A stretch of 62,696 nt of DNA, the filler included, from Sluysia triapertura (Eukaryota), in the NCBI GenBank assembly GCA_046118255.1. It is 5 parts of 5 records of this genome, joined end to end, with 100 filler letters (N's around TTAATTAATTAA, not from the genome) between each part and the next. Parts side by side here need not be neighbours in the genome. Positions count along the whole stretch, not along the records: positions 51,188 to 62,696 come from JBJNIA010183957.1; 4 more parts are not named here. One strand, written 5' to 3'. The notes below the pieces were generated by a model. The model did not search any database. It was not told the DNA's origin and was given only the letters and a program-made list of their open reading frames with translations. The translations under genes and the position numbers were made by a program. Below are positions 1,744-62,696 of the stretch, in pieces; the stretch's first letter is position 1, and each line of letters starts with the position of its first letter.

Positions 1744-2488
1744 ATGATATCCAAAGTGGCGAAGACAATTTATTTGTTAAATTCAAATGAAATAACTCCA
1801 ATTGAAGCTATACAAGTGAGTATTGAAGATGAATCACTATTTAGTTTTATTGAATTATTGGAAAATCCTAAGATAAAGATGCTCTCTCAAGATGAAAGTA
1901 CTAAACCATATTTTGATCTGTTAGAATTGTTTTGTTATGGTAATTATTCTGATTATAAAAAGTTGCAAAATCAATTACCAAAATTAACTCCAAAGCAATT
2001 GCGTAAATTGCATCAGTTAACAATTTTGTCTTTATCTATGACAAATGATGTTATTCTTTATGATGAAATGTATTATGCTCTAAATATGCATGATCAAACA
2101 GAATTAGAATCAATGATTCTTGATATGATTTATATGAATATGATTGATGGGTATTATGATCAAGAGCAACAAAATTTTCACGTAAAATCCAGCACTGGTC
2201 GGGATATTCCTACTAGTAAAGTAAGATAGAAATTATGCATGTTCATTTTATGTTTAAAAAGGCAACTTATTAATTTCGACATTTTTAGCAAGAACTTAAC
2301 ATATTTAGATTAAAGAAATTCGTCAAAAACTGATAAATTGGGGCTCTAAATGTAATGCTGTAATAGAAAAATTAAATCACGAATTTACGGTAGCGAATAA
2401 TAATAAAGCTCGATATAGAATGGAACAACAACAAAGTGCAATAAATCTTTCAAAGGCCCGTGAAGAAATTATACAAATGTTAAAAAAA
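1744..2488 (+). CDS. COPS7: COP9 signalosome subunit 7 (PCI domain); exons 1744-2220 and 2309-2488, 3' end uncertain
   Basis: Exon 1 has LLELFCYGNYSDY...LPKLTPKQLRKLHQLTILSL...ELESMILDMIY...GRDI. An 88-nt GTAAGA..TAG intron leads into IKEIRQKLINWGSKCNAVIEKLNHEFTVANNNK, the typical CSN7 C-terminal helices. A GTAAGT donor lies at 2489; otherwise the frame reads through to a stop near 2527. Confidence 0.88.
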
Positions 2489-3911
2489 GTAAGTAAATAT
2501 TGTATTCTTGGATTCTTATTATTGTAATTGGTCAAATAAAAGTACTTAATAATCAAATTTATTGATACATTCATTAATTTTGAAATTCCGAATACTATTT
2601 TTATAAACAATGAATGGAATTTAGCACTACATTTTATCTTGTTTGATAATTTTATAAAAGAAGCTAGTGCAACATTTAATATTGCTTTCAGTAATCATTT
2701 TAAAAATATCTGTGATGGTTTTTTGTGGTTATAAACCAGTTCTATCATTTTATATGACACTCAGAACTTCAATATTTAATTTCACTTTAATCTTAGTAAT
2801 TTTAAAATAATGCTTTCTTTTATTTTAACTTACTGGGTTCGTCTTATGGTTGTTACCCAGACGGGATTTTGTTAACAATTTAGAATTACTTTCATCATAC
2901 GAAGGTCCTTTATAATTTTTACATTATTAGTGCGTCATAACAAAATGAAACAAAAAATTCAACAAGAATTTTTTTTACGTTTTTCATTTCTTTCTACTTA
3001 GAAATGATACAACTAGACTTAGTATACTCGTTAAGCACAAAACTTAGAAATTGAATGTGGAATCCGTAGACGAAATTGAGATGTTTCTTACTACTTATAT
3101 TCTTGATATAAACTGCACCAATTGGGATTTTTTATTATGTTACAAGATTTAAATTCAAAAATTTGAAGTTATGTTCCTGTTACAGTTGAAATATAAATTA
3201 GACACATTTAAAATTGTCAATTCTATAAAATTAAAGTTTCATTCTTTGTTGTGTTGATGCTGAATTAATTCAACATTTTATATTTATTATAAATGTAGGC
3301 GTGATACTTGTTGCGCTCTTTTTACAATCAAAATTATTAGGCCACGCCTAAATTTTATAATAATTTTATTTATATTTATTATTATTATTATTATTAATAA
3401 TAATAATATTATCATTTATTACTATTACATTTTTGTTATTACTCAAAAATTATTACATTATTATTTTAGTAATTGCATTTATATTCTTGATTCGTAAAAT
3501 TGTTCCAGTGTTAAAAGTTTTTTTTGGAGGTGCCATATGTTTTGTTCACATTTACAACAGCAAACATGTATTCTTTATCAGTTATTAATTGCGTTTCTTC
3601 ATTAATATCAACATTTCCTTCACAACTTAACACTGTTTTTCTTATTGCTGATGCTGTTACTGTCGGTGATAATGATTATCTTGATATAATTTTCTTTCTA
3701 TGAACTTTTTTTTATGTAGATGTTGAACATTAATTTGCTTTTCATATACTGCTTAATTTCTTTCTTTAAAGCAGTGTACAAGTTCATGTAATAATATTTT
3801 GTTAAAATTTAACACCAAGCATTTATAAGCAACATTCACCCTATATATTAAGTAATTACCTTATGTTTTCATAGTAATCTTAATTCAATAATATATATTG
3901 ATAATTACTTA

Positions 3912-3940
3912 CAGTAGTGGCCAAATTATTAGACTAAAGA
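3912..3940 (+). mobile_element. Solo Tc1-family TIR
   Basis: TA-CAGTAGTGGCCAAATTATTAGACTAAAG is nearly identical to the reverse complement of the TIR at 35102-35129 that ends a Tc1 remnant. Confidence 0.55.
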
Positions 3941-6459
3941 GCATTATTTAGTCGAGGGAGTTTGTTTTAGTAGGAATCAAATATATTGAGATAAATCGGT
4001 AATTCAAACAAACTGAATAAAAATATAGTTATTAAAATAATCAGAATGATAGTTTATATTTTAAAATAATACACTGTATCAGGAATCATTGTCTCATAGT
4101 TTTATCCAATTTATTAGCTACCAAAAAGACCATAAATTGTAAAAATTAAATATTATTGTTTAGTAAATTATGATGCTGAATAAATGTTAATTATTAAATA
4201 TAAGATTTAATGTCTATTTATTCAAGTTATGATATTTTATTCACTGCCAATGAAAACTATTTTTAGAGACGAGTTCTGATTTAAAGTATGATGAAATTCG
4301 TTATTTTTATACGCCAGAGCTTAATGTTTTACATGAACATAATTCATTGTCATTATTGCGCAATATTGCGATTTTCTTACAATCATATTTTCTTCATGAT
4401 AGTTTGTATTTAGAAGATAAATTGATCTGTCGTTGCTGTACTAAGAAACCAATTTTTGAAAGAAAGTCTAGTTAAGGTTATCCACATTTTAAAGATTAAT
4501 AAACTAAGAATGCAAAATTTAAGATAAAGGTCAGAAAACACAGATAATTTTATAAATAAAATTACAATTATAGTTTCCAATTATTTTAAAAAAGACAATT
4601 AGGAGCAGAAAAATTAGAGTTTACAATGAAGCAAATACGTAAGCATCTCACAATGAAAAGTATAAAATTTAATACATTTAATGTCAACAATATCTGATAT
4701 TTTCATCGATTTTTTAAGTACTTCTGATGTTTCGTTAGCAAACATTTTTATATTCCTTATAAAATCTCGAAGCAGCGCCCCAAGATCTAATAAATTTGTA
4801 TTTAAAGTCATTATATTTATTTGAAAAAATGACACTGTTCACGAATTAAGAACAATAAGAAATTTGCAAGACGAAATAGATACTGCCAATGAGAATGCCG
4901 ATGTTTATAAATAAGAACTAAATAACCTAATAAAAAATGGAATCAACTGGCCGATAATGACAATGAAATTGAAGATTTAAGAATGACAAATGATAGAAAA
5001 TTGAAAAATATTGAATTAACAAGAGTTAACAAGAGAAAAACAATGAAACTAGTGTTATTAACCAAAGTTATCGTAAAAATTTGTACAATTATTCACTAAT
5101 TGCTGTGTTCCAATTACAAAATTCTGCTTTTTATGTATATTGTGTTTTTCGTGAGTCTATAACTAATAGTTATTTAATTTTCATCATATAAAGGTCCTCT
5201 CTAAAATCAACTTCCTCTTTCAATATTTTCGTATGAACTGGATCATATGTACTGCAAGTTTTTTTATATTAAATTAAAACTTAATCTTACAAAATAAACT
5301 GAAGGTCACGTCCACCTAAGAAGCACAATTTATATCAGCGTAGGGTTTACAATAAGTTGCAAAAATAACATTAGCTCAAATTAAAAAAATATTTTAACAT
5401 GGGTTAAACAAGTCGTTTTACGATAAAGTATATAAAGTTTATTTAAACCAGTCTTTGTACGGTGTAGTAACTGTTTAAATAAATTTTATTGTACCTTAAA
5501 AAGATTTAACTAAAAAAATTTATGGTCCAGTATATACTCCTATTATTTTTAATCATGATAATAACAACATAGAGATAATAATCCTACAAAATATATATTA
5601 ATTAAAATTTTTTACACGTAAAATAAACGAAAGGTTATACAAAAAATTATAATAACAATATATATAACAATATATAGTTAAAGTGATATTTTATAATCTC
5701 TTAAATTACAGTGAGATCTTAAGAACTTATTCACTTCTGAATGGAATTCTCAGCAAAATTGAAATTGATCTTGACAGTTGTAGTTGAAATGAAAATTGTG
5801 ATGGCGTCCAAATTTCGCTTTCTTTTTACACAGAAATCTGGACAGTCACATTGATTATCTTTCTATTTGATTTAACAAAACAAAGTTTAAAAATAATTAT
5901 ATTATTTTATTTCATTAAAATTAATAATTATATTATTTTAAAATAATAATTAATTTATTTTAAAATTTATTTGAAGTATTAATTATTTTATAATATCAAT
6001 AATGATTTTAACAAAATTTATAAAATAAAAATAGTTATAGTAAAAATCCAAGTTATAATAAAAATAATTCAGCGGTACTTTCGTCCGCCAACTGCTTCCT
6101 CTTGTAGTTCAGTTCTTATAGTTCAACCCTTTGTAAGGTTTTCTCTAGGTCGCCAATTGTGGTGCTTTACCTTGTGGCTTTACCTTGAAATGTGATGAAA
6201 CATCACAGCGTCTTCGCCACCAAATAGACATGTCAAGGGTATTAAATTTCTTGCCAAGGCTTAAAATTACTCGTTTATGGAAACGTAATTTTTTCTCTAA
6301 GGGAACATGTTTGTGACGTACCATTAAGGTGTTTCGTATTATATCAAGTTATTTTTGGAAATAAGTTTTATATTTGATTAGATTGTATTTGTATTGATAA
6401 GTATTATAACTATGATCTTAAATTTTAATTATATTTTGTTCAAAAGATAAGAGTTTGTT

Positions 6460-6896
6460 TGTCACAAAACTCATTATCTTTGGATAATTGCTAGATAATA
6501 TTAAGGCGGAAATTCTACGGAAATTTATGATCAAATATGATTAATAAAATTGGAACATAAAACCGACTCTAAGAAGTAAAGATGCCTTGTCGATATATAT
6601 TGTCTATTTGCATAAAATATTTGTCCAAATAAAATTAATGAATGAATTAATGAATTAATGACGAATTAATGAATGAAATTTCTCTGCGCTGACAGCGCTA
6701 TTTATAATTTATTTTAATTTATGACCTTATGGGGTCAATTGCGTGAATGGTAATATGCATATAGTTACTTTTATTTTTATGTAAAAATCTAGGCTATTAA
6801 ACCTAATGGAAAATTATTATTCTATTACATTATTAATTTCTAAAATTATAATTATCATTATAAATTGTGTCACTACCGTGACATAACTTTCCCCTT
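6460..6896 (-). mobile_element. Probable 3' LTR (about 424 bp) with polypurine tract of an LTR retrotransposon
   Basis: Termini are TGTCAC (6460) and GTGACA (6883). On the minus strand the purine tract AAGGGGAAAG-tta directly precedes the TG. A TATAAATAG box lies on minus near 6700. No recognisable pol sequence was found. Confidence 0.45.
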
Positions 6897-8731
6897 CGGA
6901 TAATTAGTCCTTAATTTTAAAGAATTTATTGCAAAAATCTTAGAAATATCATAAAAATGAAGCGCTAAAAATATAAAATGACAAAGACTGCAACATACAT
7001 TTAAATAACAATATTTTGTTATTTATTATTATTATTATTGTTATTAAACAATAATAATAATTATTAAATATAAAATAATTATAATTATTAATAGCTCTAA
7101 TTATAGATTATAAAATAATAAAATATAAAATATATAAAATTGACTGTAAAATCAATAAGTAAATCAATTACAATTAAATGAGTCTCTTCTCCGCACCCGA
7201 AAAATTCATCATCGGCCAATTCGGAGTCGTTTTCGTTGTCAAGATTGATTAACTTTCCTCTTACTTGGTAATCTTCTGTTTCCCTTGTTATGTTATTTTT
7301 TTTCATGAAAAAGGAATAGGGGTATCAAAATGGAATACTTGCATTTGTTACTTAAAATATGAAAATGCAGAGAAGATGGAAATAAAAAAGAAGGTAATTT
7401 AGACGATGAACTAGTACCTGAATTATTTATTATTTCATTAACTTCTGACAGAGGATGGATCTTCTTAAGTAAAAAGGTCAAACAGTCAAGAAAGATTCTT
7501 AGCCTGTTGTTCCCAGGAGTCGTGTGGTGGAAAAAGATAAAGAAGTTTCATCACCTTTCGCGCTCAGAGGATTGGGTTAAAAGAATTGTGGGATAACAAC
7601 TCCTCGCAACCAACCATATGGTATTTGAAATGCATTTATAATTAAATCTGGAAAGAAATCAGAGGTAAGCCAATATTGAAATTACTATAAATAGAAGTTT
7701 TTGATAGTGCCTTAGTATTAGATAGGTTGAGACATTGTTCAAATTATTATTTAACAAGTATTAAATATTATTTGGAATTTTATTGTTTAAATCGTTATTA
7801 AGTGCTGGAATGATATTTTTGTTTGAACATTTGATTGCTAAATCTAGTAAATATAAATTTAAATTAAATTAAAATAAATAATATATAAAATAAATAAAAA
7901 ACGTTTATTCCTTTTTACAGTTTTACTAATTGTGGTAAACTTATAGAATTTTGTGTTGTTAATAATGCGTCATAGACTTTAAGTCTTAAACATTTCACCA
8001 GGGAATAATTAGGAAAAATTATGTATGAAACATTTTAATTGAACTTCCATCTTTAACAGCAAAGACGAGTATTAACTCAACCTTCAGGATAAATTTATAT
8101 TTAGTCATTAAAGAAATTTAAGAGAAAAGGGTTACTAAATAAAATCTACGTTCTTAAAATATTCTTTACAATAATAATAATTCTAATTATTATAATGTGA
8201 AATAAATTTATAATTTAAAATAAGTCTTAATAAAATAAAACTAATTTCATTACTTCAAAGGAAACATATTAAAAGTTCTAAAATTAAGAAAGAAATATTT
8301 CAAAAATACACTTAATTTAGCAGCTAAACAAAAATAGATCGTAGGAAACCTTGAGTGGGACTTACCACACTCCAAAAATAAAATTTCCATGTAACAAAAT
8401 GCATAATAAAGCACATAAATTAAAACCGCATGACCTTAATATCTTTTATATAGTGTCATTGGAAAATACGAATAAAATATGGCCAATTGAAACTTGCTGT
8501 GGATTTAAATGATTTATTAATAAGTATGGAAATAGGTTCTTACAACCTTTTATTATCTTAAATTTTAAAATTAATGTTCAACGATCTTAAGTAGAAAGTT
8601 GAGTTTAGAGTTTATGATTGAAGAATGTAAATTTATAGACACTAAAGTTTTTATTCAAAACATAAAATTTAAAAATTTGGGTATTTAATAATTTCTTCGT
8701 GTCTTCGGTGCTCTTGATCATCCACATTTCG

Positions 8732-10660
8732 CTATCTAAAAAGAAAGTAGAAATCAAATTGTTTTGGTGTGATAATAAAAGAAATTACTTTCTTATAACC
8801 AATATAATTAACGTTATATATTTTCAAAGTTGTTATTTCAATACAATTCAACAAATTCGTCAGTCTGAACAAGTGATCCGTGCAAGAAAAACATTCGGCT
8901 CCATGATTCACCAACTGACGACCGCATGCGCATATACACAATTGGTTCCGAATTTCGTACGCCTACCATTTAGATCACTACTATATGGACAAAGTGCCAT
9001 TCTAATGCGTTGACTTGTAATTAATCCTTTATTGGAATATTTATGAAACATAGAATTGCTAGGAAACGACGGAATATATATTGTACTCTTGGATATATGG
9101 CTAAGACAATGACAATTAAAAGGAATAGTATTATGACATACAGAGAGTATTTTAGAATCTTCTCTATATTCCCTATATAATTTGGATATATTTATTAGTA
9201 GGAGTTTGTCTGAAATCATTGATCTTATAAACATTTTGATGGTATTTGTGTTTAGAAGATTATCCTCTTTAAATCGTATATCGGCCATAAGTATTCTTTT
9301 ACCATTGACGGAATAACTGTTAACTAGACAAACAATCATTGGTGCGAAGGCTACACCTGCTTCCATTCGGAAACTCAAAATTCCTTGGATCATCTCAAAT
9401 TCCTCTTTATAATTTTCAAATAGTTCTGCACTAATCGACATCGTAATTTCATAAAAGGCGTACTCTTTTACATTTTCATTTAATCTTGTCACCTTTATAT
9501 TCGAACACCATTGAAAAATATAATGATAGAGTTGTCCATGCTTAATCTCATTCTATTTCCGAAACTGATGATGAGAATTTTCGAATTACTAACTTTACTT
9601 TTGAATATATTTTCATAGGAATGTGTAGGAATAATGGTTTGTTCTATATTTTGATTAGCAATTTTTTTGAAAAATTAAGATCGAGCATAGAATGGAGGAC
9701 ATGCAAATAAATATTACAAATGAAAATTTCATTAAATTTTTCCGGAATACAAATGCATGAGTTTTTTCGTCGTTCATGACTATAATGTTCTTGATCATTG
9801 TTAGATGTATTTAATAAAATGCTTTTATTTATTCAGTTGTAGAAGTCATTCATATTCATAGGTCCGATTGTTCGAGAAGTATGATCTAGAGTTGATACTC
9901 GTTTTATGAATCGTTTGTCTATTATTAAATCTAAATAATCTATTGTCTTTAACGATGTGATAAAAATTGCATCGAAAATTGTACTTTTTCGTTTAATAAA
10001 TACAATATTAGCAATCATCTAATTTATTTATTAATTATAAAATATAAAAGTTATTTCATATAATTGTTTGCTGTAACTCTAATTTCTAATTTTTTAATTT
10101 TTTAAACATCAAATTGTTATCGTACGTTTCTCCAAAATAAGTGTATGAAACTTATGAAAAATAAATGTCAAATGAAATCTTTTTTAACTGTTCTGCGTAG
10201 TCGATTATTGTCTTTGTGATGATTTTCTATTGGCTGCTCAACCAAAGTAATAAAAATGAAGAGAGTCACTCTGGCTGGACAACCAGTAATAACATTATTT
10301 CTACGTTGAAAAGCCAACCACTATCAATGGTGACAAGAATTCACACGTGGCAATCAACAGTGTCACCATTGATAGTGATAAGCACTGATTAAATAACGAA
10401 ATTAAATTAAAAATGATAAAAGCAAAATGATAATAATAATAACAATGTTATTATTGCTATTATTATAATACATAAATTTTTTGAAATCTTACATGCACTT
10501 TCTTTATTTCTTTTATTTCTGGACATATTAAAAGTTGAAAATAATGAAAATTAAAAATGATAATAATAACAATGTTATCGTTATTATTATTGTTATAAAT
10601 ACATAGTCTTTATATTACTTAACACGAACTTTCCTTATACTCTTTAATATTTCTTGACAT
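8732..10660 (-). pseudogene. CCCH zinc-finger cassette, copy A (duplicated leader, hairpin, interrupted ORF)
   Basis: Leaders ATGTCCAGAAAT (10526) and ATGTCAAGAAAT (10660). Perfect 17-bp stem 10319-10335/10361-10377. ORF pieces 10018-9833, 9492-8908 and 8941-8732 include LCPYSSDLNGRRTKFGTNCVYAH. Aligns by eye to copy C (INISKL/INIYKL, HLFRL/HLNRI). Contains stops and frameshifts. Confidence 0.6.
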
Positions 10661-51187: not shown

Positions 51188-51337
51188 CCAAGTATATCTT
51201 GGTAAAATATGTTGCTTATATCTGTGCTTATAAAGTGATAAAAAGGTTTTTATGTCAGTGATAACGTTTTAAAGTTATTCACATTTTTCTTCCCATGGGG
51301 GGTAAAATTACCCCCCAGGTTGACTGACAAAGGTTAA
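51188..51337. mobile_element. piggyBac-like right end
   Basis: Subterminal palindrome GGGGGGTAAAATTACCCCCC, then ...ACAAAGG-TTAA. Confidence 0.55.
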
Positions 51338-51413
51338 ACATTTTAATTATCAATCAATTCCAAACATTTTAATCAAAATTTTATATAAATCTAAATTCAA
51401 GGATCTCAATAAT

Positions 51414-51492
51414 ATGTCAAGAAAATAGTAAAATTAAATTAAAGAAAGATCGTGTGGTAAAGGAAAAAGGTTTATGCATTTAATTTTTTGTA

Positions 51493-51529
<37 letters not shown>

Positions 51530-51830
51530 TTATTAAATTAGTTTATTATAATAATTATAATAATCATTTTAATTTTATCACTCAACAACCAATTTTAATT
51601 TATTTTCTGCCATCGGTAGACGGATTGATTAAAGCTAAATCAACATTTCGCGTTTGTTGTCTAACGATGACAGATACTAATCGAAATCATTTTGTGGTAG
51701 TTTGGTTTTTGTTTTTAAGATATCATAATCAATTATAACTACAAGTTTTTTGTCAAAATTATTAATAAATTTTCGTGAACTTTAAAACACAAATTTAAAA
51801 TTACTTTTTTTTCATCTTCTACTAAAAAAT
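51414..51830 (+). pseudogene. CCCH cassette, copy B (5' part only)
   Basis: ATGTCAAGAAAA leader with KERSC, a (TAT)n tract, a hairpin 51606-51621/51659-51674 (14 of 16 paired), then Y*SKSFCGSL and LSKLLINF (compare LSELLNNY in copy C). Confidence 0.55.
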
Positions 51831-51896
51831 CTATTACAAATTTTAATCTAGAGTTCTGAAAGTACAACAATGACAAAAAATAAGATCTAAACAAAT

Positions 51897-53473
51897 CTAT
51901 TTTTTTAAAGTAAATTCTAATTTGTTAATTATTTCCTGAATACACCTTGGCTTTTCTTTGATTAAACTTCTCAAAAGGTATAAACATAAAAGTTGACTTA
52001 TATCAAAAATAAAAGAAATAGCTTCTAAGATTACTGTAGAGTCCTCTTGAATCGCTGTGTCCAATGACATAGTAGCTTGACCGGTGTTGAAATCATTAAT
52101 GATACTAATAGTGGAATTTTCCATGTCAGCGAAGATCGACAAACTTGATTATACGTCATTGATCCTGTTCAGATGAGTGTCGAAATTAAATGTGGAACCA
52201 ATATCATATCTTATTTCATAAACGTGATGGCAATAATTACAAATTCTACTATATCTCGTGCATTCGCCAGCCGGAGTAGATTCATACAGGTAAATACTGT
52301 TCTTGTAGTATTGGTGTTCATTGGTGTTAGTTTGATTATTTATAGAAAAAGGATTGCTGTTTTCATTGAAGAATCTTGAATAGATATATCTCGATTTTAA
52401 TTTGAACATATACTTTACTACTGGTGTTGCTTTATTTGTCATGATACTCAAATCAATATCTACAATATTTGTACAAACTAATTTGTAAATATTAATAGCA
52501 ATTTCTAAAACTTAATCATGTATTTGCATACTTGATGTGTGAGCATCTTTATTTTTATTCACCATTTTACAGTACTGTAAACGAATATGATTAGAATTAA
52601 ACTGCTTATATTGAGTTGTAAAACATCGTTCATTTGAACTTGTAATCTTTTTATTCATCATCAACACTAAGTTGGGAAATTTTATAATTATTGAATATTT
52701 ATTCTGGTCTTTAAAGTATTTAGACATATCATATCGGTCTTCTAATCTAACATCGTTTTTTAAATAATCGTTCATTTGAATGTTGTATACAATATTTCCA
52801 TCATCATATTTGGATGAGATATGTGATAGAAGACTTCGTATATTAGATTCATTTAATGTGAGCATTAATTTTTACAATCGTCTAAAATTACTAAATAAAA
52901 CAAAACAATTTTTTGCCAAATTTATTAATTTTTCAAATGATTTGTAACAGTTATTGTTAGAAAATATTTGTCTCTTTTTTGCTGTTTTATTTTCTGTATT
53001 TTGGCTATAATTGTTCAATAACTCTGATAAAGTGTAATTATTTTTGTACACCATCTGTGAATTAACAACTATTGGAGAATAATAGTATTTAGCAATAGAG
53101 AACTGATTAGATGTCCAATTACACTGAAGTAAATGCAGATCGAACATCTGCACATGGTACCAGCCACTAGTTGACAATCATAGTGGAGAGTTATAAGTTT
53201 TTAATTTAAATCCGTCAACTAGTGGCAGATGCAGTAAAATAATAATAATAATAATAGTAATAGTAATAATAATAGAACAAAAATTATTTAATAAAAATAT
53301 TAATAATAATTGATAATAGAAATAATAATAAAAATGGTGATAATGAATACAATAATAGTAATACTAATAATAATAACAATAATAATAATGTAAAATAAAG
53401 ATAAAAAATTACATAAATCTTTCTTAATGTAATAAACACATTCTTTCTGCTTATATATCTTATTTCTAGACAT
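51897..53473 (-). pseudogene. CCCH cassette, copy C (best preserved)
   Basis: Leader MSRNKIYKQKECVYYIKKDLC (ATG 53473), (ATT)n tract, perfect 13-bp stem 53163-53175/53214-53226. Four ORF-track ORFs (53177 to 51897) lie in one frame separated by three TAA codons. Includes YYKNSIYLYESTPAGECTRYSRICNYCH. Confidence 0.65.
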
Positions 53474-53519
53474 TTATTTCGTTAATATTAGTATCTTTAA
53501 AAGTCTAAAAAGCTAAAAC

Positions 53520-53950
53520 TTATAATGTTTTAAGTTAATATGGTGCATTTTCGATAAACGTTTAAGGTGTTAATGTGATTCTAATGTTATAAAATAATGA
53601 GTGAATGTTTTAAATAATCATTGATGGTTTTGAATGTCGTTATGGTTTGGTAGTTGTAAGCTTGTGAATTAAAATGTTTTGAATAAACTTTAAATTGTAG
53701 ATTGATGATTTTAAAGGTAATTGTAATTCTGATGTTATGAATTATAGGTTAAAATGTTTTAATAAAATTTAAAGTGCGTTAATGATTTTGAATAGGGAAG
53801 TGATTTTGGTGTTGTAAAATTTTAACTTAAAAACGTATTAAGAATAGTTCTAGTGGACGTGATGCAATAAAATATTAAAAGTTTTTGATAGAAAAATAGT
53901 TAAAATGTTATGGAATATATGATATGTTGAATTCATTTGACATATTTCGA
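53520..53950. repeat. Degenerate ~80-bp tandem repeat upstream of cassette copy C
   Basis: TAAAATGTTTT-like anchors at about 53523, 53602, 53670, 53750, 53829 and 53901. Related sequence lies in opposite orientation upstream of copies B (51335-51400) and D (57900-58200). Confidence 0.5.
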
Positions 53951-54138
53951 TTAATTTTTAAGGTAATCTTTGATGATTTCCGATGCTGGTTAAGATCTTG
54001 ATACTCTGAAATTTTGTCTAAAGTGTTTGAAAGTATTAAGAATTATGAAATGTTCTGAAAAGTGATTTTGTTGTATGGTATTAAAATAAAATTTTAAAAT
54101 ATTGGGTTGGCCACCACACATTTCTTGGCTGTGGCCTG

Positions 54139-54200
54139 ATTGGACGCCCAATTAATGATAATCATGTACATACTATCTCACATCGTATTGGACGTCCAAT
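54139..54200. promoter_or_regulatory. Two palindromic double CCAAT boxes
   Basis: ATTGG-ACGC-CCAAT (54139-54152) and ATTGG-ACGT-CCAAT (54187-54200) in a GC-richer island between divergently oriented units. Confidence 0.45.
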
Positions 54201-54459
54201 CACAGAGCAAAACATAATATTAATAATGTTAATTGATTCCATGCATTATTTAAAAACTTTTTTAAATAATTTTTATTGAATTTTATTAGTAGTACGATCA
54301 TGGTAATAATAAAAGTTAATTGAATTTTAAATATCTATCTTTATAAGAGAATAATTGGTAAATTAAAAAAGTAGTTAACGTATAATAATTTATGTTTAAA
54401 AATTGTAATATTATGAAAAAATTATATTAGTGACAAAAGTTTACAAATCGTCTACAATT

Positions 54460-54960
54460 ATAATATCTCTAGCTAAATTACCCGGGATAATAGAGTACAT
54501 TTCAAATTTAAAATATTCAAAGTCGGCTCAATTTCAACTACAGGCTGTGCCATTAATACTAAAACGTAAAAATGATATGAATTTATCTAAAACCAGCAAG
54601 AAAAAAATTTTCCCTATGGTATTCCATTTATTCAACAATATGTAGTCAAAAATCAACGATTAATATATGTAATGATTTTGATTTCCACAGTTGAATTAGC
54701 AATACTAAAGTACTTTCAGTTAATAATAATGAAAAGATTAAATCTGAAATTAATGCGTCCATCTAGTGGTATATATTAACAGAGCTTGATATATTAGTCG
54801 ATAAATTACCGGAGCTTGATATATTAGTCGATAAATTAACGGAGCTTGATATTTTAGATGTCCACATTGTTGCAACAACTCAGTGTCGAATTTTGATGAT
54901 GCTCTATCATACGAATCAAATTAAAGAAATATATTATCCTATGCAACATTTAATAATGCG
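54460..54960 (+). pseudogene. Decayed DEAD-box RNA helicase N-terminal fragment
   Basis: LKYSKSAQFQLQAVPLILKRKNDMNLSKTSKKK (Q motif and decayed motif I AKTGSGKT), VMILISTVELAI (Ia PTRELA) and HIVATTQCRILMML (Ib TPGRL) appear in the correct order and spacing, with frameshifts. Confidence 0.6.
54781..54857 (+). repeat. 30-bp tandem repeat, about 2.6 copies
   Basis: GAGCTTGATATATTAGTCGATAAATTA(C/A)CG repeated. Confidence 0.92.
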
Positions 54961-55903
54961 TTATCAATTAGTTGAAAAGAGAGAAAGAGTTTTATGCATA
55001 TTACCATCAAAATTAAGTTATAAAATAAAACAGAGAAATAAAAAGATACTCGAAAGAATTCAAATCATACTACGTAATTAAACTATAACAACGTTTAAAT
55101 GTTATCTTAACTTTCATATTATAAATTTTAACATTCTAAAAGAAAAATGTATATTATGCAATTACTATTTGAAGTTAATCATGTTTTGTAGTACCACATC
55201 ACAATAAGTACATTTTTAGTTTTGTTTAATACAACTTTTGGTTAAGCTGTTTTAAAACTTGAATTCAATTAAGAATGAATACGATGATTATAAAACGATT
55301 TATTAATTGTACTGTGTTAAATTAAATAAGACTAGACGATTGGAAATTAATTAATTAATTTTTTATATCGTTTATTAATTTCAGAATTGGATTCAAGTGA
55401 AAAATTAATATATCATTTATCTGTATAAATCGACTTAATGAAAAATGAATATCAAATAATCACAAAAATTGTTTTTATATTGATTAATAAAAGTACATAT
55501 ATAAAAATCAGATGATAAATTCACAATTCGTGAAATATTCGGAATTTTCCTTCTATGACAATACTTCCATTGCTGATTTAAATAAAATTTATTAGAATAT
55601 TGTTTAATATACATTTTATAAAAACAGTTTTACTTATTTAAAAATTGAATGGCTCATATTTAACAATACATTGTTTAACTATTCTTTATAGTTACCTTAA
55701 GAAATCTTTAAGGTCACTTTATTTTATAATTATTTTTAGATGTTTTATGTAAGGTTCATATTCGACATTGCATATGAAGATTTTACTAAAATTTCAAAAA
55801 CATATCCAAATTCTTTAAGCCTTAGTTGATAGACAAATTGGACAAACTTCAGAAATGAATTTTTGAATCCATATCTTAAGGACTTATAAGTTGCTATGTT
55901 AAA

Positions 55904-56630
55904 CTAAAACAGCCACAAATCGTTTAAATTATTTAAAACTAATTGAAAAGTTACTAAATTGCCGTGCTTGGTTCCGCTTAATTTGCCATTGAAGCAGAGA
56001 CTTCTACAAGTCTCACATGTAACTACTTTATTATCAAGATTGAGTATTGAATATTTGTTGGATCGACTTGCTAGCGGACATGAAAAATACACATTTCTTT
56101 TAATAATTTTTCCAGTGTTTCATTGCAAATCAACCAGCTTAACCTATTTCTCATATGTGTTACTCGGAAGATTCTCCTGTGGGATATGACTAATTATAGT
56201 AATATAAATAGCAACGAAAAATTCTCACTAAAATCGTAGCCAATCTTTAAAATGTTAAATGGATTGAGCCAACATCTATTTCGCCATTCACCAATAAAGA
56301 TTTTAAATCTACGGGATTGTTCATTGACATTTAACTAATAAATGATGAGCACAGCACTGTTAGATTTCGATACGTTACCGTATCAATTAATTTATATAAT
56401 AGAATCGAGATATTAAAGTCACGACAATCTAATTTAATAATTTCATTAAATTTTGTAAGATAGATTTCAACTGGTTTGTTCCAACAATTTGCTACTTGAA
56501 TTACTTTAATAAAAACTAAATCAGCGGCAAGTTTCGTATCTGGATACTGATATGTTACCTTCCTAGAGAAATGAAAGCATCCGTTGACAAATATTTTTGT
56601 TATATGAGTTGTCATATGTGTGATTCTCAC
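55904..56630 (-). pseudogene. Degraded coding-like region, unassigned
   Basis: Largely open minus frames (56630-56331 and about 56330-55904, with one stop) and higher GC than the flanks. No family recognised. Confidence 0.25.
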
Positions 56631-58271
56631 ATAATGATGTCTAGAATTAAATCACGATAAAACGAGATTTTATTACATAAATGAAATCAACTTTTATTCA
56701 TCACCATTACATAGATCATTAGACGTAATTGGCGCTAGTGTAATGTAAGTTTTAACAAGATTTATTGCCAAATTTATTTCATCTTTATTCTATTCATGTT
56801 CTTTTCTGAATTTATTTTTGATATAGTAATAACAGTTTTGATCATATTCACAAGAGTAATTTTTATTCTAACAATTTTTAATAATCTCTTAATTACTAAA
56901 CTTTTTAGTTTTTCAATTTATAAATTTTTGCCCATCATTAAAATTGATTATTTCTTAAATTAATAGAATCTCTAGGTGGATTCTATATTACACCAAAAAT
57001 TATTATAATTATATTAATATTGGTATTGTTATTTTTTGGTATGAGAAATCAAGTTTTTCTTATCATGATTTTCGTATTAAACGTTTTTAAGTACTTAAAT
57101 AAACTTAGATGTTACAGATTGATGTTATATAACATAGAATAAAAAGATGTATGAAATATGGTCTGAGATAAAGAATGTTTTTTGTCTGCAGTGATTTAAT
57201 ATAAAACGTTATAAATGACTTACTTAAGACCAAAATGCAATGTGTCTAACAAATTACGACTGAAGATGCAATTAATGTCGAAGTAGATGGAAAAAGTAAT
57301 TCAGTAGTATATAGTTTTAGGAAGACTTAAGCATCGAAAAATATCGATTTAGAAGGGGATTTAAGTAATAATTACCACGTTTTAAGTTACAATTTAAGTG
57401 ATCAAGATATAAAATCAGCCTAACAAAATGGTAGTTAAGAAACAGTAAGTAGGAAACATTAAAATCTAGCCAGCAGATAAGGTCACAGTTAGTAATGATA
57501 GTGGAATTAAAGAATGGTACATAAGTAAACATACTAAAGTATGTGATAAATTTTCTAAGTTTCAATCAACGAAAACATGCAACTAAACAGAGTTAGATAA
57601 GGGTTGGGTTTTAGACTACATTTCAGAGATTTCTTTTATTATAAATTTTCAGACTAAACTTTTTTAGGTAATAAACCATAAACTAAGAAACCAGATATGT
57701 TAATATACGCTCAGAGTTATATTTTTTTATATAGTTTTTTTAGATAAAAGCGGTATAAATTCATGTTAGAAATTACATAGATATTTTTATTAATTCACTT
57801 ATAATGATTTTAAATTCCCCTTAACTAGATTTAATATATTTAAAATTGCACGATTAGATAACTTATAGATAAGTGTTTTTAAATATTGTGGAGAACAACC
57901 TTTTCATTCGAAATTTTAATTCAACATTACAAACGAAATATCACACTTTATAACATTTCACATTTTAATTGTACAGATCTATTAAAATTTTAGATACTTT
58001 AAAACATTTTAAATTCACAATTTCATAATATTAAAATTATATTCAACATCGAAAATCATCAAATGTATATTTCAAACATAATTCAAGTTCACAATTCTTC
58101 AACATTCACATCATTAATATTATTGAAAGACATTAAAATTACATTGTGAAACATCATTATAATCAAAATGGAATTTCTTTTAACATTTTCAGCTACGTTG
58201 TTACATTATTTTTATTATTACTGCATAAATTCTGTAGAAAAGACATTAATAATTTAAAGAAATCTAAAAGC

Positions 58272-59681
58272 ATTTCAAGAGTACAAGATATCAAATAAAC
58301 AGAATTATGTAAAGAAGAAATTTTTATGTTATTATTATTATTAATTCTTATTTTATTATTCATTATTATTTATTTTATTTTATATTTATTATTATTCTTA
58401 GTTTCATCATTACTAATATTATTACCTGCATTAATAATGTCATTATTAATTACTGTTATTAATTGATTTTTATTCTCAACATTTTGTCACAAAATTTGCG
58501 TTGTTCATTGTCATTATCTCCTGGTAACACCACCTTTAATTGAATTTTTAATTTTATGGTCACAGTAACTGTCATTGTGGACAGTATTTTGATAAGTTTA
58601 AATTAAATTTCATTACATTGATATAGCTACTAACAGTCATAATTTCCAATTGGACATCCAATCATTGCTAATCAATGGAAAAAAGCACTACTCGATTCAA
58701 TAAACAAAAAAACCAAAAACATTATTAAAAAAAACTTCTTGACAATCATTGTTGTTTTAATTTTATACTCAGTTAAAAAGACACAGTTTCTAGAATGAAA
58801 ATTTTATTAATGATTTTGTATATTTAATTAATTATCATGGATCATAACAATAACAGAAATGATAATGCAATTATTAGCTCTTTATCGAACAATCTAGTTC
58901 ATTTTAATCGTTGAAAATCAATTGAAAATAGTAAGAAAGTAGTATGTATCATAATATAAGATGTGGTTCTGTTGGACAGTTAAATCTTGATTTAGTACTA
59001 GAATATCAATTTTATAAGAGTGCAGCACTGTTTTATAGAAAAGGTTATATTGATTTAAAATTGTATGATGATTCTAACAATAATTATTTACCAAATAAAG
59101 ATTCTGATGAAATACGTTCTACAGAAAACATTTAAACTACAATTAATAGCGATTCAATTAACATCATCATGTAAATTGCAAAATCAGGAATGCTCAACAT
59201 TAAATGTATATCTTCGCATTATTAAACAAGATTTTAAAACAATCAAGTATTTCAAGATTCTAATTCTCCATGTTCCACAAAGAATATTTCAAGTAATCGG
59301 AACAAAGAATCTTTTGACGTGTTTAGTCCGAGTAATGATAAATTTGGCATTATGAATCACTCTCATGACAAATATAAGTTTCCAAAGTATGATCTCTGTC
59401 CATTTCCGGCTACTACATCGGGACTATGTGTAAAGTATGCCTATCTGTGTCCTTATGCCCATAGTTTCAACGAATTGACACCAATTTCTGAAAATTCAAT
59501 ACGGGCATCATATTTCAGTATCGAAAATTTTAATGAAGTAAATTTTTATTCTTTTGAAAATTGTTTTATTCTTGATTTTTATGTTCGTAATAATAATCTC
59601 ATAATTTTACTTTCAGGATATGACTCAATCGTTCTTTTTGTATGTTCGAGAAATAAAACAAAAAATTTTTATAACTTTTAG
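58272..59681 (+). pseudogene. CCCH cassette, copy D
   Basis: Leader SRVQDIK*TELCKEE, a (TAT)n tract and a weak stem. SNWTSNHC compares with CNWTSNQF in copy C, and KRHSF*NENFINDFVYLIN with KRQIFSNNNCYKSFEKLIN. The finger KYDLCPFPATTSGLCVKYAYLCPYAHSFNEL is intact. Frameshifted. Confidence 0.65.
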
Positions 59682-60019
59682 CAATGTTGTAAATAAATAT
59701 TAATAAATATTTAGCAATTAATTTTATGTTTTGTATTAACGAATTTTGTAAAGTTTTATCTATAAAGTCAATAATGCGTAAAGTTTTTTGAAGATCTAAT
59801 AACTTTTTTCGTTCATAGCAAAATTTTAATTAAAAATAACTAGTTTAAAAATATTATAACCCCAAAAATATAATGTTATTGATAAATACGATATCCATAA
59901 TAGGAACCTTGTTATATATTGATAAAACTGTATAAAAATAAGTGTAATACTGAAGTAATTAAATACTAATTAAAAAGTAATAAATAAATAATAGCAGCAG
60001 TAATATTTTCAAATGCCTT

Positions 60020-60340
60020 TTGTGATAATGAAGTATCTTATTCTCACTGATAAAAATTTGTGGTACAGATAGTATGAGACCTCATTTTTCTGTATCTGTT
60101 GCACTATAGCACATTCAGTTAATGCCTTTGATTGTTTCAGGACACAATTTTACATCATTAAGAACTTATTCTATATTTTCTAGTACACTTATCAAAATTT
60201 GAAATATATTTTCCATTGCAAATACAATAAATGGTAATATTTTACATATGGCTTCACATTTCATATCCAGGGTATTCCATTGGTCCTTTTGACAAAAAAT
60301 TCCATCTTGAATAAGTATAATCACGATACATAAGACCATA
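60020..60340 (-). pseudogene. Possible secreted Cys-containing (saposin-like?) gene remnant
   Basis: Signal-like MVLCIVIILIQDGIFC, then CEAICKIL...LCPETIKGIN*MC, with two in-frame stops. Confidence 0.25.
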
Positions 60341-60431
60341 AAGAACAAGTTTAATATATTACCGAATTCTTCTTTTTATCATATTGTGAGAATTTAGTGG
60401 AGATACGATAGAATAAAATAAGATTTTAACG

Positions 60432-60462
60432 TGAGTCCACCAACGTACTAGGCTTTGGATTT
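60432..60462 (-). repeat. Dispersed GC-rich motif, copy 4 (internally deleted)
   Basis: Reverse complement TCCAAAGCCTAGTACGTTGGTGGACTCAC. Confidence 0.65.
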
Positions 60463-62546
60463 GTAGATAAAATATTTTAAAATAAAGGGTAGAAAAATTG
60501 GCTAAAGCGTAGTTTTTTGCTAAGGTATTCCTTGCTTAATAACTTAACTGTTAATTTCAATTTAATTCGGGAAGTATCGTGTATGAACTATCTAAGGTAT
60601 GCGTGATTTTGCTATTATTACTTTTCGATTTTAGTAAGATCTGAAGGTATATAATATTAAGTGTTCGAAGTAATTAAATCAATAGTTTAGTAAGAATTTA
60701 CGATGGTTCTATGAAAAGGATCAATAAAAATGATTTTTCGAGATTATATTTAAATTCTAATCGTCGAAAACGTATTTGAAACTGAAATTTTAGAGAACAG
60801 TAAATAATTACTCAAATTTTTATTAAATACAAAAATATAATAATGGAATTTACAGTAAAATTATATGTTAGTTTGCGAGGAAAATAAATAAAATTAATTT
60901 CCTGAGTCAGTGGTAATTTAATAATGATTTTGCATCAGATCTATTATAACATCTGTTAAAGAAAAATTAATTAAAAATGATTTTTCGTGTATTTTGAATA
61001 TATTCTACCTTAACATAAATAAGCAAACTAATTATTAGTTTTTGTATAATTCGATAAAGAGTTCCACGTTCAGTTTCAAAACGAATTTTCTTGTCAAATT
61101 GATTATTAAATTACCAAATTGTGTGAAAAAGAATTGTGAAACTGTCTAAGAAATTTCAAGGCTATATATAATTGTTTTAGTCTGACCTCGACCAGACTAA
61201 AACAAATTATTTTATTTAATATATAAAAACAAAATGCGAATTTTCTTTTAAAATTTTGAAAAATGTATATTCAATTATCATTTGTCATTTAAAAATGAAT
61301 AATTTGACAATCAAAACTAATAAATTAATTAAAAACTAATTATTAATTAAAAACAATTACTTACATTAAAATTAAGATATGAATCCTAGAATTACAAAAT
61401 TACAAATAAATAATAAAAAGCATAAATATTAAAATCAATAATTTTGTACTATGTACACAGTTATATTATAATAAAAATCAATAATTTTGTAATATACAGT
61501 TATAATATAAATACATTATAGTATCTAGTCATAACACACATAATATTCATATCACAACAATATGGAAGAAGTGGTTCTGAGTTTTCTCTAATATTTACAT
61601 TTCGATTAAAAACAAGTTTCAATACGAATATATTTCAGTTTAGCAAATACGATTAGCCTTAGAGCTAAGGGATTTTGTGAATTAATTTTAATAATGTTTG
61701 TAGGATTTCGCTACCGTACATGTTTAAAACGATTTAGCTCATTAAATTTATGATTTTATTTAATAATGCTAATTAAGTGCAATTTTAGTATCGTATATTT
61801 AAAAACGATACATCTTACTTATTCCAGTTTTTTCGGTTGGATTCTAAGCTAGTTAATTTTAATTATAAAATTGAGGTTAAACTAAAAATCATACGACTTA
61901 AACTGCTTCTTAATGAATTTTAATCAGGTTCCTCTAAACAGAACCTACGAAATTAATCTTGTCTTAAGTAATTTGACTACCAGTTTGTTATGAATAAAAC
62001 CTATCATGAGTTAAGTAATTTATTCGTTTTGTTATATAATAAATTTTATTGAGATTTCCTGTAAATGGAACTTATTAATAATTAAGTGATTTTTTTGATA
62101 GTTTTTAAAAAGAACCTATGAAATAAGGAACTAGAAATTTAAGGCCCTGCACAAATATATAAAATACAAGTAATTAAGTCGAGAAAGTAGTAGCAGCAAC
62201 AGTAATAATAATCTTTATATTTTTTGTATAATATCAAATTAGTTTAGTTTTTTATCACAAAATTTAATGTTGAATGATTAAGCATTTCAAAAGTAGTACT
62301 AATAATAAAATGGTCAAATCATATTTTAAATGTAAATAAGTAATGCTACTTTGAATATTCAATTTAATAAACTTCAAAAATATGTTTTGTGACTACTAAT
62401 ATATATTCATTTAATGCTTTCGTAATTATATTAATTATATTTTTCCTATTAATTAAGAGAAAGTTATTAATTAATTTTAATTTAATTTGTTAAAATATGA
62501 CTGAAACAACAACAATAATAATGACACTATAGTAAAATTGTCAAAT

Positions 62547-62696
62547 TGTTGGGATTGCCCAACTTTAGATTAAGAGACGAGTAAAATAATATATAGAATT
62601 ACAAATGAAGGAAGAATTAATGAGAAGTAACAGATGAAGTATTATAAACTTCGTTGAAATAAGAATAATGAAAAAGAAAACATTTAAAATGATCCT
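62547..62696 (+). repeat. Dispersed repeat, possible LTR start, copy 2
   Basis: Matches 38466-38639. Confidence 0.7.

What the first reader, a model, noticed from the sequence alone, without database searches (positions are those of the whole stretch)
51414..59681. Four-copy CCCH zinc-finger cassette with fixed architecture (also at 8732-10660)
Seen: copies A (10660-8732, -), B (51414-51830, +), C (53473-51897, -) and D (58272-59681, +) share the order: leader ATG TCN AGA AA (ATT in D), basic residues with Cys, (ATT)n tract, hairpin, a W-x-S-x-x-C-like motif, a long unique ORF, and (in A, C, D) a C-x9-C-x6-C-x3-H finger. The finger is intact in D and lacks one Cys in each of A and C. B, C and D share one contig and are preceded by related AT-rich repeats. 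Established: CCCH fingers with a YKTELC-like lead-in are RNA-binding modules of the TIS11/tristetraprolin type; the spacing here differs from canonical C-x8-C-x5-C-x3-H. Inference: this is a lineage-specific, fast-evolving RNA-binding family or an unclassified mobile element. The copies are very divergent yet keep the non-coding layout, and I see no transposase, RT, TIR or TSD.
Basis: partly seen in the sequence, partly recalled or inferred. Interest (0 to 1): 0.8.

Follow-up and report, generated by a model that had tools for sequence, protein, structure and literature searches.

The report
Nested copies of an unclassified transposon
The repeated "zinc-finger cassettes" are decaying copies of a mobile DNA element present in tens to hundreds of copies in this AT-rich genome, one of them inserted inside another, so the shared layout is a transposon backbone and not a cellular RNA-binding gene family.

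Summary
B, C and D share a G-poor 5' region with AAACATTTTAA motifs, a ~90-nt "leader", an (ATT)n tract and the palindrome ATTGGACRTCYAAT. C and D also carry a long broken ORF ending in a weak TIS11-like CCCH finger.

The copies are transposable elements. Contigs of the one public run holding this DNA pile up on 51188-55200 at 80-95% identity, about 15-30 copy-equivalents over the C ORF and hundreds over the 5' region. Six contigs join 51687 directly to 54119. C (51693-54118, minus strand, 2426 bp) is therefore an insertion into B. It is flanked by a 5-bp duplication (CATTT) and ends TGTGGTAG...CCACCACA. B resumes at 54124 and ends at 55198, where depth falls to single copy. D starts with a homologous terminus at 57887.

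TGTNR/CA ends with a 5-bp duplication point to a retroviral-integrase-type enzyme. That fits a non-autonomous Ginger2/TDD-like element or a solo LTR, and I could not decide between them.

The ORFs are orphans: nothing real among 1.84 billion proteins, and no Pfam transposase, RT or integrase. Only the finger aligns between C and D. All in-frame stops are TAA, most simply decay.

It is an ordinary kind of thing in a new, unclassified family.

The parts
51188..51687 (+). Copy B, 5' part. Holds AAACATTTTAA motifs at 51336 and 51362, the leader at 51414, the (ATT)n tract at 51491-51558 and the box CTGCCATCGGTAGACGGATT at 51607. It is cut on the left by the contig edge and on the right by the insertion of C.
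   Evidence: joint 51687->54119
51688..51692 (.). Left copy of the 5-bp target-site duplication, CATTT.
   Evidence: table 5 (5 letters fit both sides of the joint)
51693..54118 (-). Copy C, a complete element of 2426 bp inserted into B. On the + strand its ends read TGTGGTAG...CCACCACA, a 7/8 terminal inverted repeat with TG..CA.
   Evidence: six contigs join 51687 to 54119, and 105 contigs end at 54118 and continue into unlike flanks. Also.
51897..53177 (-). C ORF of 427 codons in one frame. It has in-frame TAA codons at 52872, 52512 and 52149 and ends with TAG at 51897. It is an orphan.
52227..52286 (-). C degenerate finger, Y-x9-C-x6-C-x3-H. It also reads as C-x2-C, which gives a borderline zf-BED score.
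   Evidence: (zf-CCCH_UNK 18.1 bits; zf-BED 20.1 bits against a cut-off of 20.6)
53095..53235 (-). C hairpin region. A 14-bp stem pairs GCCACTAGTTGAC with GTCAACTAGTGGC. A second hairpin has the palindrome ATTGGACATCTAAT (53106-53119) as its 3' arm.
   Evidence: (-41.2 kcal/mol, z -4.9)
53238..53389 (-). C (ATT)n microsatellite.
53400..53473 (-). C 'leader'. It contains TATATAAG, so it may be a core promoter rather than a coding start (inference).
53480..54118 (-). C 5' subterminal region. It is G-poor on the sense strand and made of degenerate repeats of about 80 bp with AAACATTTTAA motifs. It ends at the terminus TGTGGTGGCCAACC.
   Evidence: repeat-number variants among the joints
54119..54123 (.). 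Right copy of the target-site duplication, CATTT.
54124..55198 (+). Copy B, 3' part. It holds a hairpin made of the palindromes at 54139-54152 and 54187-54200, a 30-bp x 2.9 tandem repeat at 54771-54857, and no intact ORF. It ends ...GTAGTACCACA.
   Evidence: Depth falls from 400 to 22 at about 55190.
57887..59866 (+). Copy D. Its 5' terminus TGTGGAGAACAACC is homologous to that of C. The 3' end, ...AACCCCAAA with AATAT on both flanks, is tentative.
   Evidence: C versus D over the first 60 nt scores 14, and 0 of 284 controls reach it. The 3' ends are not significantly alike. Also.
58932..59681 (+). D ORF of 250 codons with 4 in-frame TAA. There is a frame change upstream and a possible 79-nt GT..AG intron at 59538-59616.
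59397..59462 (+). D finger, C-x9-C-x6-C-x3-H, with a KYDLCPF lead-in.
   Evidence: zf-CCCH_UNK 22.6 bits against a cut-off of 31.1; TIS11d 1RGO, E 0.18

Best explanation
B, C and D are copies of one family of repetitive mobile elements, about 2.0-2.4 kb long.

Shown:
- The region is multi-copy in this genome.
- C (51693-54118, minus strand) sits inside B.
- Other B-like copies lack C and join 51687 directly to 54119.
- C is flanked by a 5-bp direct duplication (CATTT) and ends 5'-TGTGGTRG...CYACCACA-3'.
- D begins with a homologous terminus at 57887.
- B ends with TACCACA at 55198, where read depth drops to single copy.

The 'fixed architecture' is the element's backbone, in this order: terminus, degenerate subterminal repeats of about 75-80 bp with AAACATTTTAA motifs (one orientation only), a TATA-containing 'leader', an (ATT)n microsatellite, hairpin-forming palindromes, an ORF, and a 3' tail of about 200 nt.

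Inferred:
- TGTNR/CA termini with a 5-bp staggered-cut duplication are the signature of retroviral-type DDE integrases. The copies were therefore most likely integrated by such an enzyme supplied in trans, because no integrase is encoded here.
- The one-sided repeats and TATA-like leader act as the element's promoter.
- The ORF, with its TIS11-like CCCH finger, is an element-borne accessory or captured gene that has diverged between subfamilies and is now inactivated by TAA nonsense codons in these copies.
For: -: 3416 contigs of run X1 lie on 51188-57187, most at 80-95% identity. Summed depth is 200-450 over the C ORF and 2300-9600 over 53588-54187, against about 16 for the exact single-copy contig covering 55102-57187.
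- the joint 51687->54119 (skips 2431) is seen in 6 contigs, with variants, and 5 letters fit both sides.
- 105 contigs end at 54118 and run on into mutually unlike sequence (agreement 0.42).
- the flanks read GAAAT CATTT|TGTGGTAG...CCACCACA|CATTT CTTGG. The first 60 nt of C and D align better than 284 of 284 control slices.
- the shared 5' module exceeds what composition gives.
- of 17 well-supported differences between C and its paralogues, 7, 6 and 4 fall on codon positions 1, 2 and 3, and 3 are synonymous. This is neutral decay of this copy.
- (PMC2836005): Gypsy LTRs, Ginger1 and Ginger2 share TGTNR termini, and TDD-4 and TDD-5 make 5-bp duplications.
Against: - No integrase, RT, RNase H or transposase was found on the contig (Pfam), so the mobilising enzyme is inferred only from the ends.
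- The terminal inverted repeat is only 8 bp.
- The TSD rests firmly on one insertion (C). D's 3' end and its AATAT duplication are tentative, and the 3' ends of B, C and D are not significantly alike beyond TACCACA.
- Run X1 may be the data set the assembly came from. It shows copy number and empty sites within one genome but is not independent support.
- The ORF bodies of C and D do not align, so they may be unrelated cargo rather than one diverged gene.
Confidence: 0.85

Rival explanations
1. Each copy is a solo LTR of a large Gypsy/BEL-type retrotransposon, about 2-2.4 kb long, and not a self-contained element. The subterminal repeats are U3 enhancers, the TATA-containing leader is the promoter, and the ends are LTR att sites.
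For: TGT...ACA ends, short inverted termini and a 5-bp duplication are the classical LTR signature. The repeats run in one direction and lie upstream of a TATA-like box. All three copies stand alone.
Against: A 427-codon ORF lies wholly inside the unit, downstream of the putative promoter. That would require an R-U5 of more than 1.5 kb. The sequence after B's end is single copy and has no TGG primer-binding site. The 105 flanks beyond terminus 54118 show no common internal (polypurine-tract) sequence, agreement 0.42. No gag or pol is on the contig.
Confidence: 0.3
2. The copies are tandemly or segmentally duplicated cellular genes of a lineage-specific CCCH RNA-binding family with a conserved promoter and 5' UTR.
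For: The finger resembles TIS11d and Pfam zf-CCCH_UNK weakly. The ORF is long and gene-like, with a possible intron and AATAAA in D.
Against: There are tens to hundreds of copies. C has precise termini with a TSD and is nested inside B in the opposite orientation. 105 copies have unrelated flanks. All copies here are broken. There are no relatives in protein databases.
Confidence: 0.05
3. TAA is a sense codon in this organism, with TAG as the stop, so the ORFs of C, D and 56651-56190 are intact genes.
For: All 9 in-frame stops in the three long frames are TAA. There are no frameshifts inside them, and all three end in TAG.
Against: The frames were defined by TAG/TGA, so the pattern is partly circular. 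In 24% GC coding sequence most nonsense mutations give TAA. D changes frame upstream, and if its intron is real it ends in TAA next to AATAAA. C has an in-frame TGA at 53178 if the frame is extended. C differs from its paralogues neutrally.
Confidence: 0.07

Closest known systems
[quoted passage not shown]
   Same: TGTNR termini, AT-rich targets, and a 5-bp target-site duplication as in TDD-4 and TDD-5. Non-autonomous copies that share only the ends are known for Ginger elements.
   Different: Ginger2 has terminal inverted repeats of 50-180 bp and encodes an H2C2-DDE integrase. Here the TIR is 8 bp and no integrase is present. Metazoan Ginger2 elements make 4-bp duplications.
Solo LTRs of Gypsy-like LTR retrotransposons
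   Same: TG..CA ends with short inverted termini, a 5-bp duplication, one-directional repeats upstream of a TATA-like box, and nesting within their own kind.
   Different: The unit carries a complete 427-codon ORF. No primer-binding site, polypurine tract or gag-pol interior is seen beside any of the three copies.
TIS11/tristetraprolin CCCH zinc fingers (TIS11d, PDB 1RGO)
   Same: D reads K-Y-D-L-C-P-F..S-G-L-C-x-K-Y..C-x-Y-A-H-x-F-x-E-L, which matches the KTELCRPF..SGxCKY..CxFAHGxxEL pattern.
   Different: There is one finger, not a tandem pair. Spacing is x9/x6/x3, not x8/x5/x3. Scores are below the Pfam cut-off and the PDB match is E 0.18. The first Cys is lost in C. The finger sits in a transposon ORF.

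Membership tests
Transposable element (any class) | Multiple dispersed copies with the same termini and different flanks | tested here: met
   105 contigs end at 54118 and continue into unlike sequence. Depth is 13-600 times single copy.
Transposable element (any class) | An empty site that lacks the element, with a target-site duplication at the filled site | tested here: met
   the joint 51687->54119 is seen in 6 contigs. CATTT lies at 51688-92 and 54119-23. The empty sites are paralogous, not allelic.
Integrase-type elements (LTR retrotransposons, Ginger) | Termini 5'-TGTNR...CA-3' | tested here: met
   C has TGTGG at both ends. D has TGTGG at its 5' end. B ends in CCACA. The pattern is from PMC2836005.
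Integrase-type elements (LTR retrotransposons, Ginger) | Encodes a DDE integrase (rve) or lies next to gag-pol | tested here: not met
   Pfam on all ORF pieces of C and D and on 8 other ORFs found no rve, RVT, RNase H or gag. Mobilisation would have to be in trans.
Ginger2/TDD | Terminal inverted repeats of about 50-180 bp | tested here: not met
   Only 7 of 8 terminal bases are inverted-repeated in C.
LTR retrotransposon (complete or TRIM/LARD) | Two direct LTRs, with a primer-binding site after the 5' LTR and a polypurine tract before the 3' LTR | tested here: not met
   There are no direct terminal repeats within C. B's 3' flank, TCACAATAAG, is single copy and has no TGG primer-binding site. 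Solo-LTR status cannot be excluded.
Transib | 5-bp TSD together with CACWRTG termini | tested here: not met
   The TSD length fits, but the termini are TGTGG, not CAC.
hAT | 8-bp TSD, BED finger and hAT dimerisation domain | tested here: not met
   The TSD is 5 bp. zf-BED scores 20.1 bits, below the cut-off of 20.6, in C only. There is no Dimer_Tnp_hAT.
TIS11/TTP tandem CCCH family | Two C-x8-C-x5-C-x3-H fingers, each with a (R/K)YKTELC lead-in, 18 residues apart | tested here: not met
   There is one finger with x9/x6/x3 spacing. Pfam zf-CCCH did not hit and zf-CCCH_UNK is below its cut-off. The phmmer match to 1RGO is E 0.18.

The most novel reading that the evidence does not exclude
The element is a self-contained, gene-like transposon with its own promoter repeats, 5' hairpins, ORF and poly(A) signal between TGT...ACA ends. 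Its only protein is an orphan of about 430-490 residues with a TIS11-like CCCH finger. That protein would be either a previously unrecognised transposase or integration factor, or an RNA-binding protein the element uses on its own or the host's transcripts. Its rapid divergence between subfamilies (C versus D) would reflect conflict with the host.
Probability: 0.1. Interest if true: 0.7.

Novelty: new member of a known kind. Interest (0 to 1): 0.3.

Why it matters
The main value is for annotation. These cassettes should be masked as a repeat family and not called as CCCH RNA-binding genes. The in-frame TAA codons should not be taken as evidence for a variant genetic code. The family itself is unclassified: integrase-type ends, an orphan ORF and no enzyme. 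If intact copies exist elsewhere in this genome, they could show what mobilises it and whether a TIS11-like finger has been recruited by a transposon.

Tried and rejected
- Word-index protein search with the D finger piece: no hit.
- Exhaustive HMMER with the C central piece against 1.84 billion representatives: one hit, a 948-aa internally repetitive protein matched in 8 weak stretches, judged spurious.
- ESM Atlas features with the C finger piece: recognition 1616 and best score 0.83, which is chance level.
- Exact-protein contig look-up: not on record.
- AlphaFold2 on single sequences: C central piece pLDDT 41.7, D piece pLDDT 35.2. These are too poor for fold searches, so none were run.
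- Rfam and tRNA scans of the piece: nothing.
- Two exact-pattern scans of JGI metagenome contigs, with the B palindrome region and the C terminus: nothing.
- A literature search for transposons with CCCH ORFs: nothing relevant.
- No RNA run holds the stretch, so transcription, the putative intron in D and the start codon could not be tested.
- B's body in three frames against the C and D proteins: no similarity above shuffles.
- A resemblance of the C 3' end (ACAAAAACC near the terminus) to an RSS nonamer was considered. I rejected it because the orientation and the heptamer do not fit.
- Covariation in hairpin 1 between B and C was considered. I did not claim it, because RNAfold prefers other pairings in B and D has no counterpart.
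Full report
**What the piece is.** The piece 51188-62696 is 11.5 kb at 24% GC with no N and few long ORFs, which looks like a eukaryote with low coding density. Rfam and tRNA scans found nothing.

**Checking the observation: what holds.**
- The leader ATGTCNAGAAA occurs at 51414 (+) and 53473 (-), with ATT TCA AGA at 58272. About 90 nt around it align at 81% (B-C), 76% (C-D) and 67% (B-D).
- Trinucleotide ATT/AAT arrays follow at 51491-51558, 53238-53389 and 58329-58424.
- The 'W-x-S-x-x-C' motif is a DNA palindrome, ATTGGACRTCYAAT, at 53106, 54139, 54187 and 58649. That is 8 strand-hits against 0.63 expected, and 0 of 100 shuffles reach it.
- The regions upstream of the leaders are G-poor on the sense strand. 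C versus D, upstream only, scores 69.7 bits against a maximum of 39.7 for 54 control slices.
- They share the motif AAACATTTTAA in one orientation. Seven of the nine AACATTTT on the contig lie there.
- Both show a weak 75-80 bp periodicity.

**Checking the observation: what is weaker.**
- The hairpin is strong in C (14-bp stem, -41.2 kcal/mol, z -4.9). It is weak in B (z -1.8) and absent in D (z 0.25).
- C holds one minus-strand frame of 427 codons (53177-51897), broken by three TAA and ending in TAG. D holds 250 codons (58932-59681) with four TAA and a frame change upstream.
- D carries C-x9-C-x6-C-x3-H. C has Tyr at the first Cys.
- At protein level only the finger region aligns (BLASTP E 2e-5; Smith-Waterman z 3.6).

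**The decisive result.** Only one public run holds this DNA, and it is kept as contigs. I laid those contigs on 51188-57187 at 80% likeness or more. In total 3416 contigs lay on it, most at 80-95% identity.
- An exact 2311-nt contig of depth 16 covers 55102-57187, which sets the single-copy level.
- Summed depth is 200-450 over the C ORF, 2300-9600 over 53588-54187, and 81,713 over 51188-51387.
- Six contigs, plus variants, join 51687 directly to 54119, skipping 2431 bp. Five letters fit either side of the joint.
- The sequence reads GAAAT CATTT | TGTGGTAG ... GGCCACCACA | CATTT CTTGG.
- 105 contigs end at 54118 and continue into mutually unlike, AT-rich sequence (agreement 0.42).

Copy C (51693-54118, minus strand, 2426 bp) is therefore a discrete unit inserted into a B-like unit. 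It carries a 5-bp target-site duplication and TG..CA ends that form a 7/8 inverted repeat.

**Boundaries of B and D.**
- B's palindromes and the rest of its body lie at 54124-55198. It ends in ...GTAGTACCACA, where depth falls from 400 to 22.
- D begins at 57887 with TGTGGAGAACAACC. Its first 60 nt align to the 5' end of C better than any of 284 control slices.
- D's 3' end is tentative: ...AACCCCAAA at 59866, with AATAT on both flanks.

**What it is.** The cassettes are copies of a repetitive mobile element, nested in its own kind. The 'fixed architecture' is the element's backbone.

**How it most likely moves (inferred).** PMC2836005 states that Gypsy LTRs, Ginger1 and Ginger2 all have TGTNR termini, and that TDD-4 and TDD-5 make 5-bp duplications. 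The ends here fit that pattern. I infer integration by a retroviral-type DDE integrase supplied in trans. No integrase, RT, RNase H, gag or transposase domain was found in any ORF piece of C or D, or in eight other ORFs of the contig.

**Non-autonomous element or solo LTR?** I could not decide between a non-autonomous Ginger2/TDD-like element and a solo LTR. Four points argue against the solo LTR:
- A complete 427-codon ORF lies downstream of the TATA-like leader.
- B's 3' flank is single copy and has no primer-binding site.
- The 105 flanks beyond terminus 54118 share no common internal sequence.
- There are no direct terminal repeats within C.

Against Ginger2, the TIR is only 8 bp and there is no enzyme.

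**The ORFs.**
- They are orphans. The word search with the D piece found nothing.
- Exhaustive HMMER with the C central piece found only one repetitive, spurious protein.
- Atlas features are at chance level.
- Single-sequence AlphaFold models are unusable, with pLDDT 42 and 35.
- Pfam gives only sub-threshold zf-CCCH_UNK, 22.6 bits in D and 18.1 in C against a cut-off of 31.1. It also gives a borderline zf-BED in C, 20.1 against 20.6.
- The best solved relative of the D finger is TIS11d 1RGO at E 0.18, sharing ELC-PF, SG-C-KY and C-x-(F/Y)AH-x-F-x-EL.

The TIS11-like reading of the finger is a reasonable resemblance, but membership in the family fails.

**Decay of copy C.** Seventeen well-supported differences between C and the majority of its paralogues fall 7, 6 and 4 on codon positions 1, 2 and 3, and only 3 are synonymous. 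This is the pattern expected for a dead copy drifting neutrally.

**The TAA pattern.** All nine in-frame stops in the three long frames of the contig are TAA, and each frame ends in TAG. I considered a code in which TAA is a sense codon. I rate it unlikely (0.07) for four reasons:
- The frames were defined by TAG and TGA, so the pattern is partly circular.
- TAA is the expected nonsense product in coding sequence this AT-rich.
- D changes frame upstream, and if spliced it ends in TAA beside AATAAA.
- These are transposon copies.

**Verdict.** It is explained by an ordinary kind of thing: a new, unclassified transposon family with integrase-type ends. It is not a cellular RNA-binding gene family. 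Confidence is 0.85 that these are nested transposon copies and about 0.5 that an integrase-type enzyme moves them. The superfamily remains unresolved.

Noticed in passing
window 51188-51387: The left edge of the contig has a summed contig depth of 81,713, several thousand times single copy. It contains a G6/C6 hairpin, GGGGGGTAAAATTACCCCCC, at 51297-51316. This is a very high-copy repeat, either part of B's 5' region or another insertion, and it probably broke the assembly.
   Followed up: no
window 56190-56651 (-): A third long frame of 154 codons with two in-frame TAA, ending in TAG, lies in low-copy DNA (depth 41-60). Its 99-aa standard ORF (56331-56630) has no Pfam match.
   Followed up: partly
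window 59538-59616 (+): A textbook short intron, GTAAAT...TTTTACTTTCAG of 79 nt, lies in the D ORF. Spliced, the frame would end ...NVVNKY TAA at 59701-59703, within AATAAA signals. There was no RNA data to test it.
   Followed up: no
window 54771-54857: A 30-bp tandem repeat (2.9 copies, 91% matches; unit ATAAATTAACGGAGCTTGATATATTAGTCG) lies inside B's body. Contig joints show copy-number variants among paralogues.
   Followed up: no
window 60059 (+): TGTGGTACAG resembles the family's terminus. It could be the end of another, minus-strand copy to the right of D. No matching CCACA end or 5' module was found up to the contig end.
   Followed up: partly
window 54108-54200: B's two palindromes, ATTGGACGCCCAAT and ATTGGACGTCCAAT, pair into a 16-bp hairpin next to a GGCCAC...GTGGCC hairpin (-40.3 kcal/mol, z -4.1 on the minus strand). 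The 5' terminus of C abuts this GC-rich island.
   Followed up: partly
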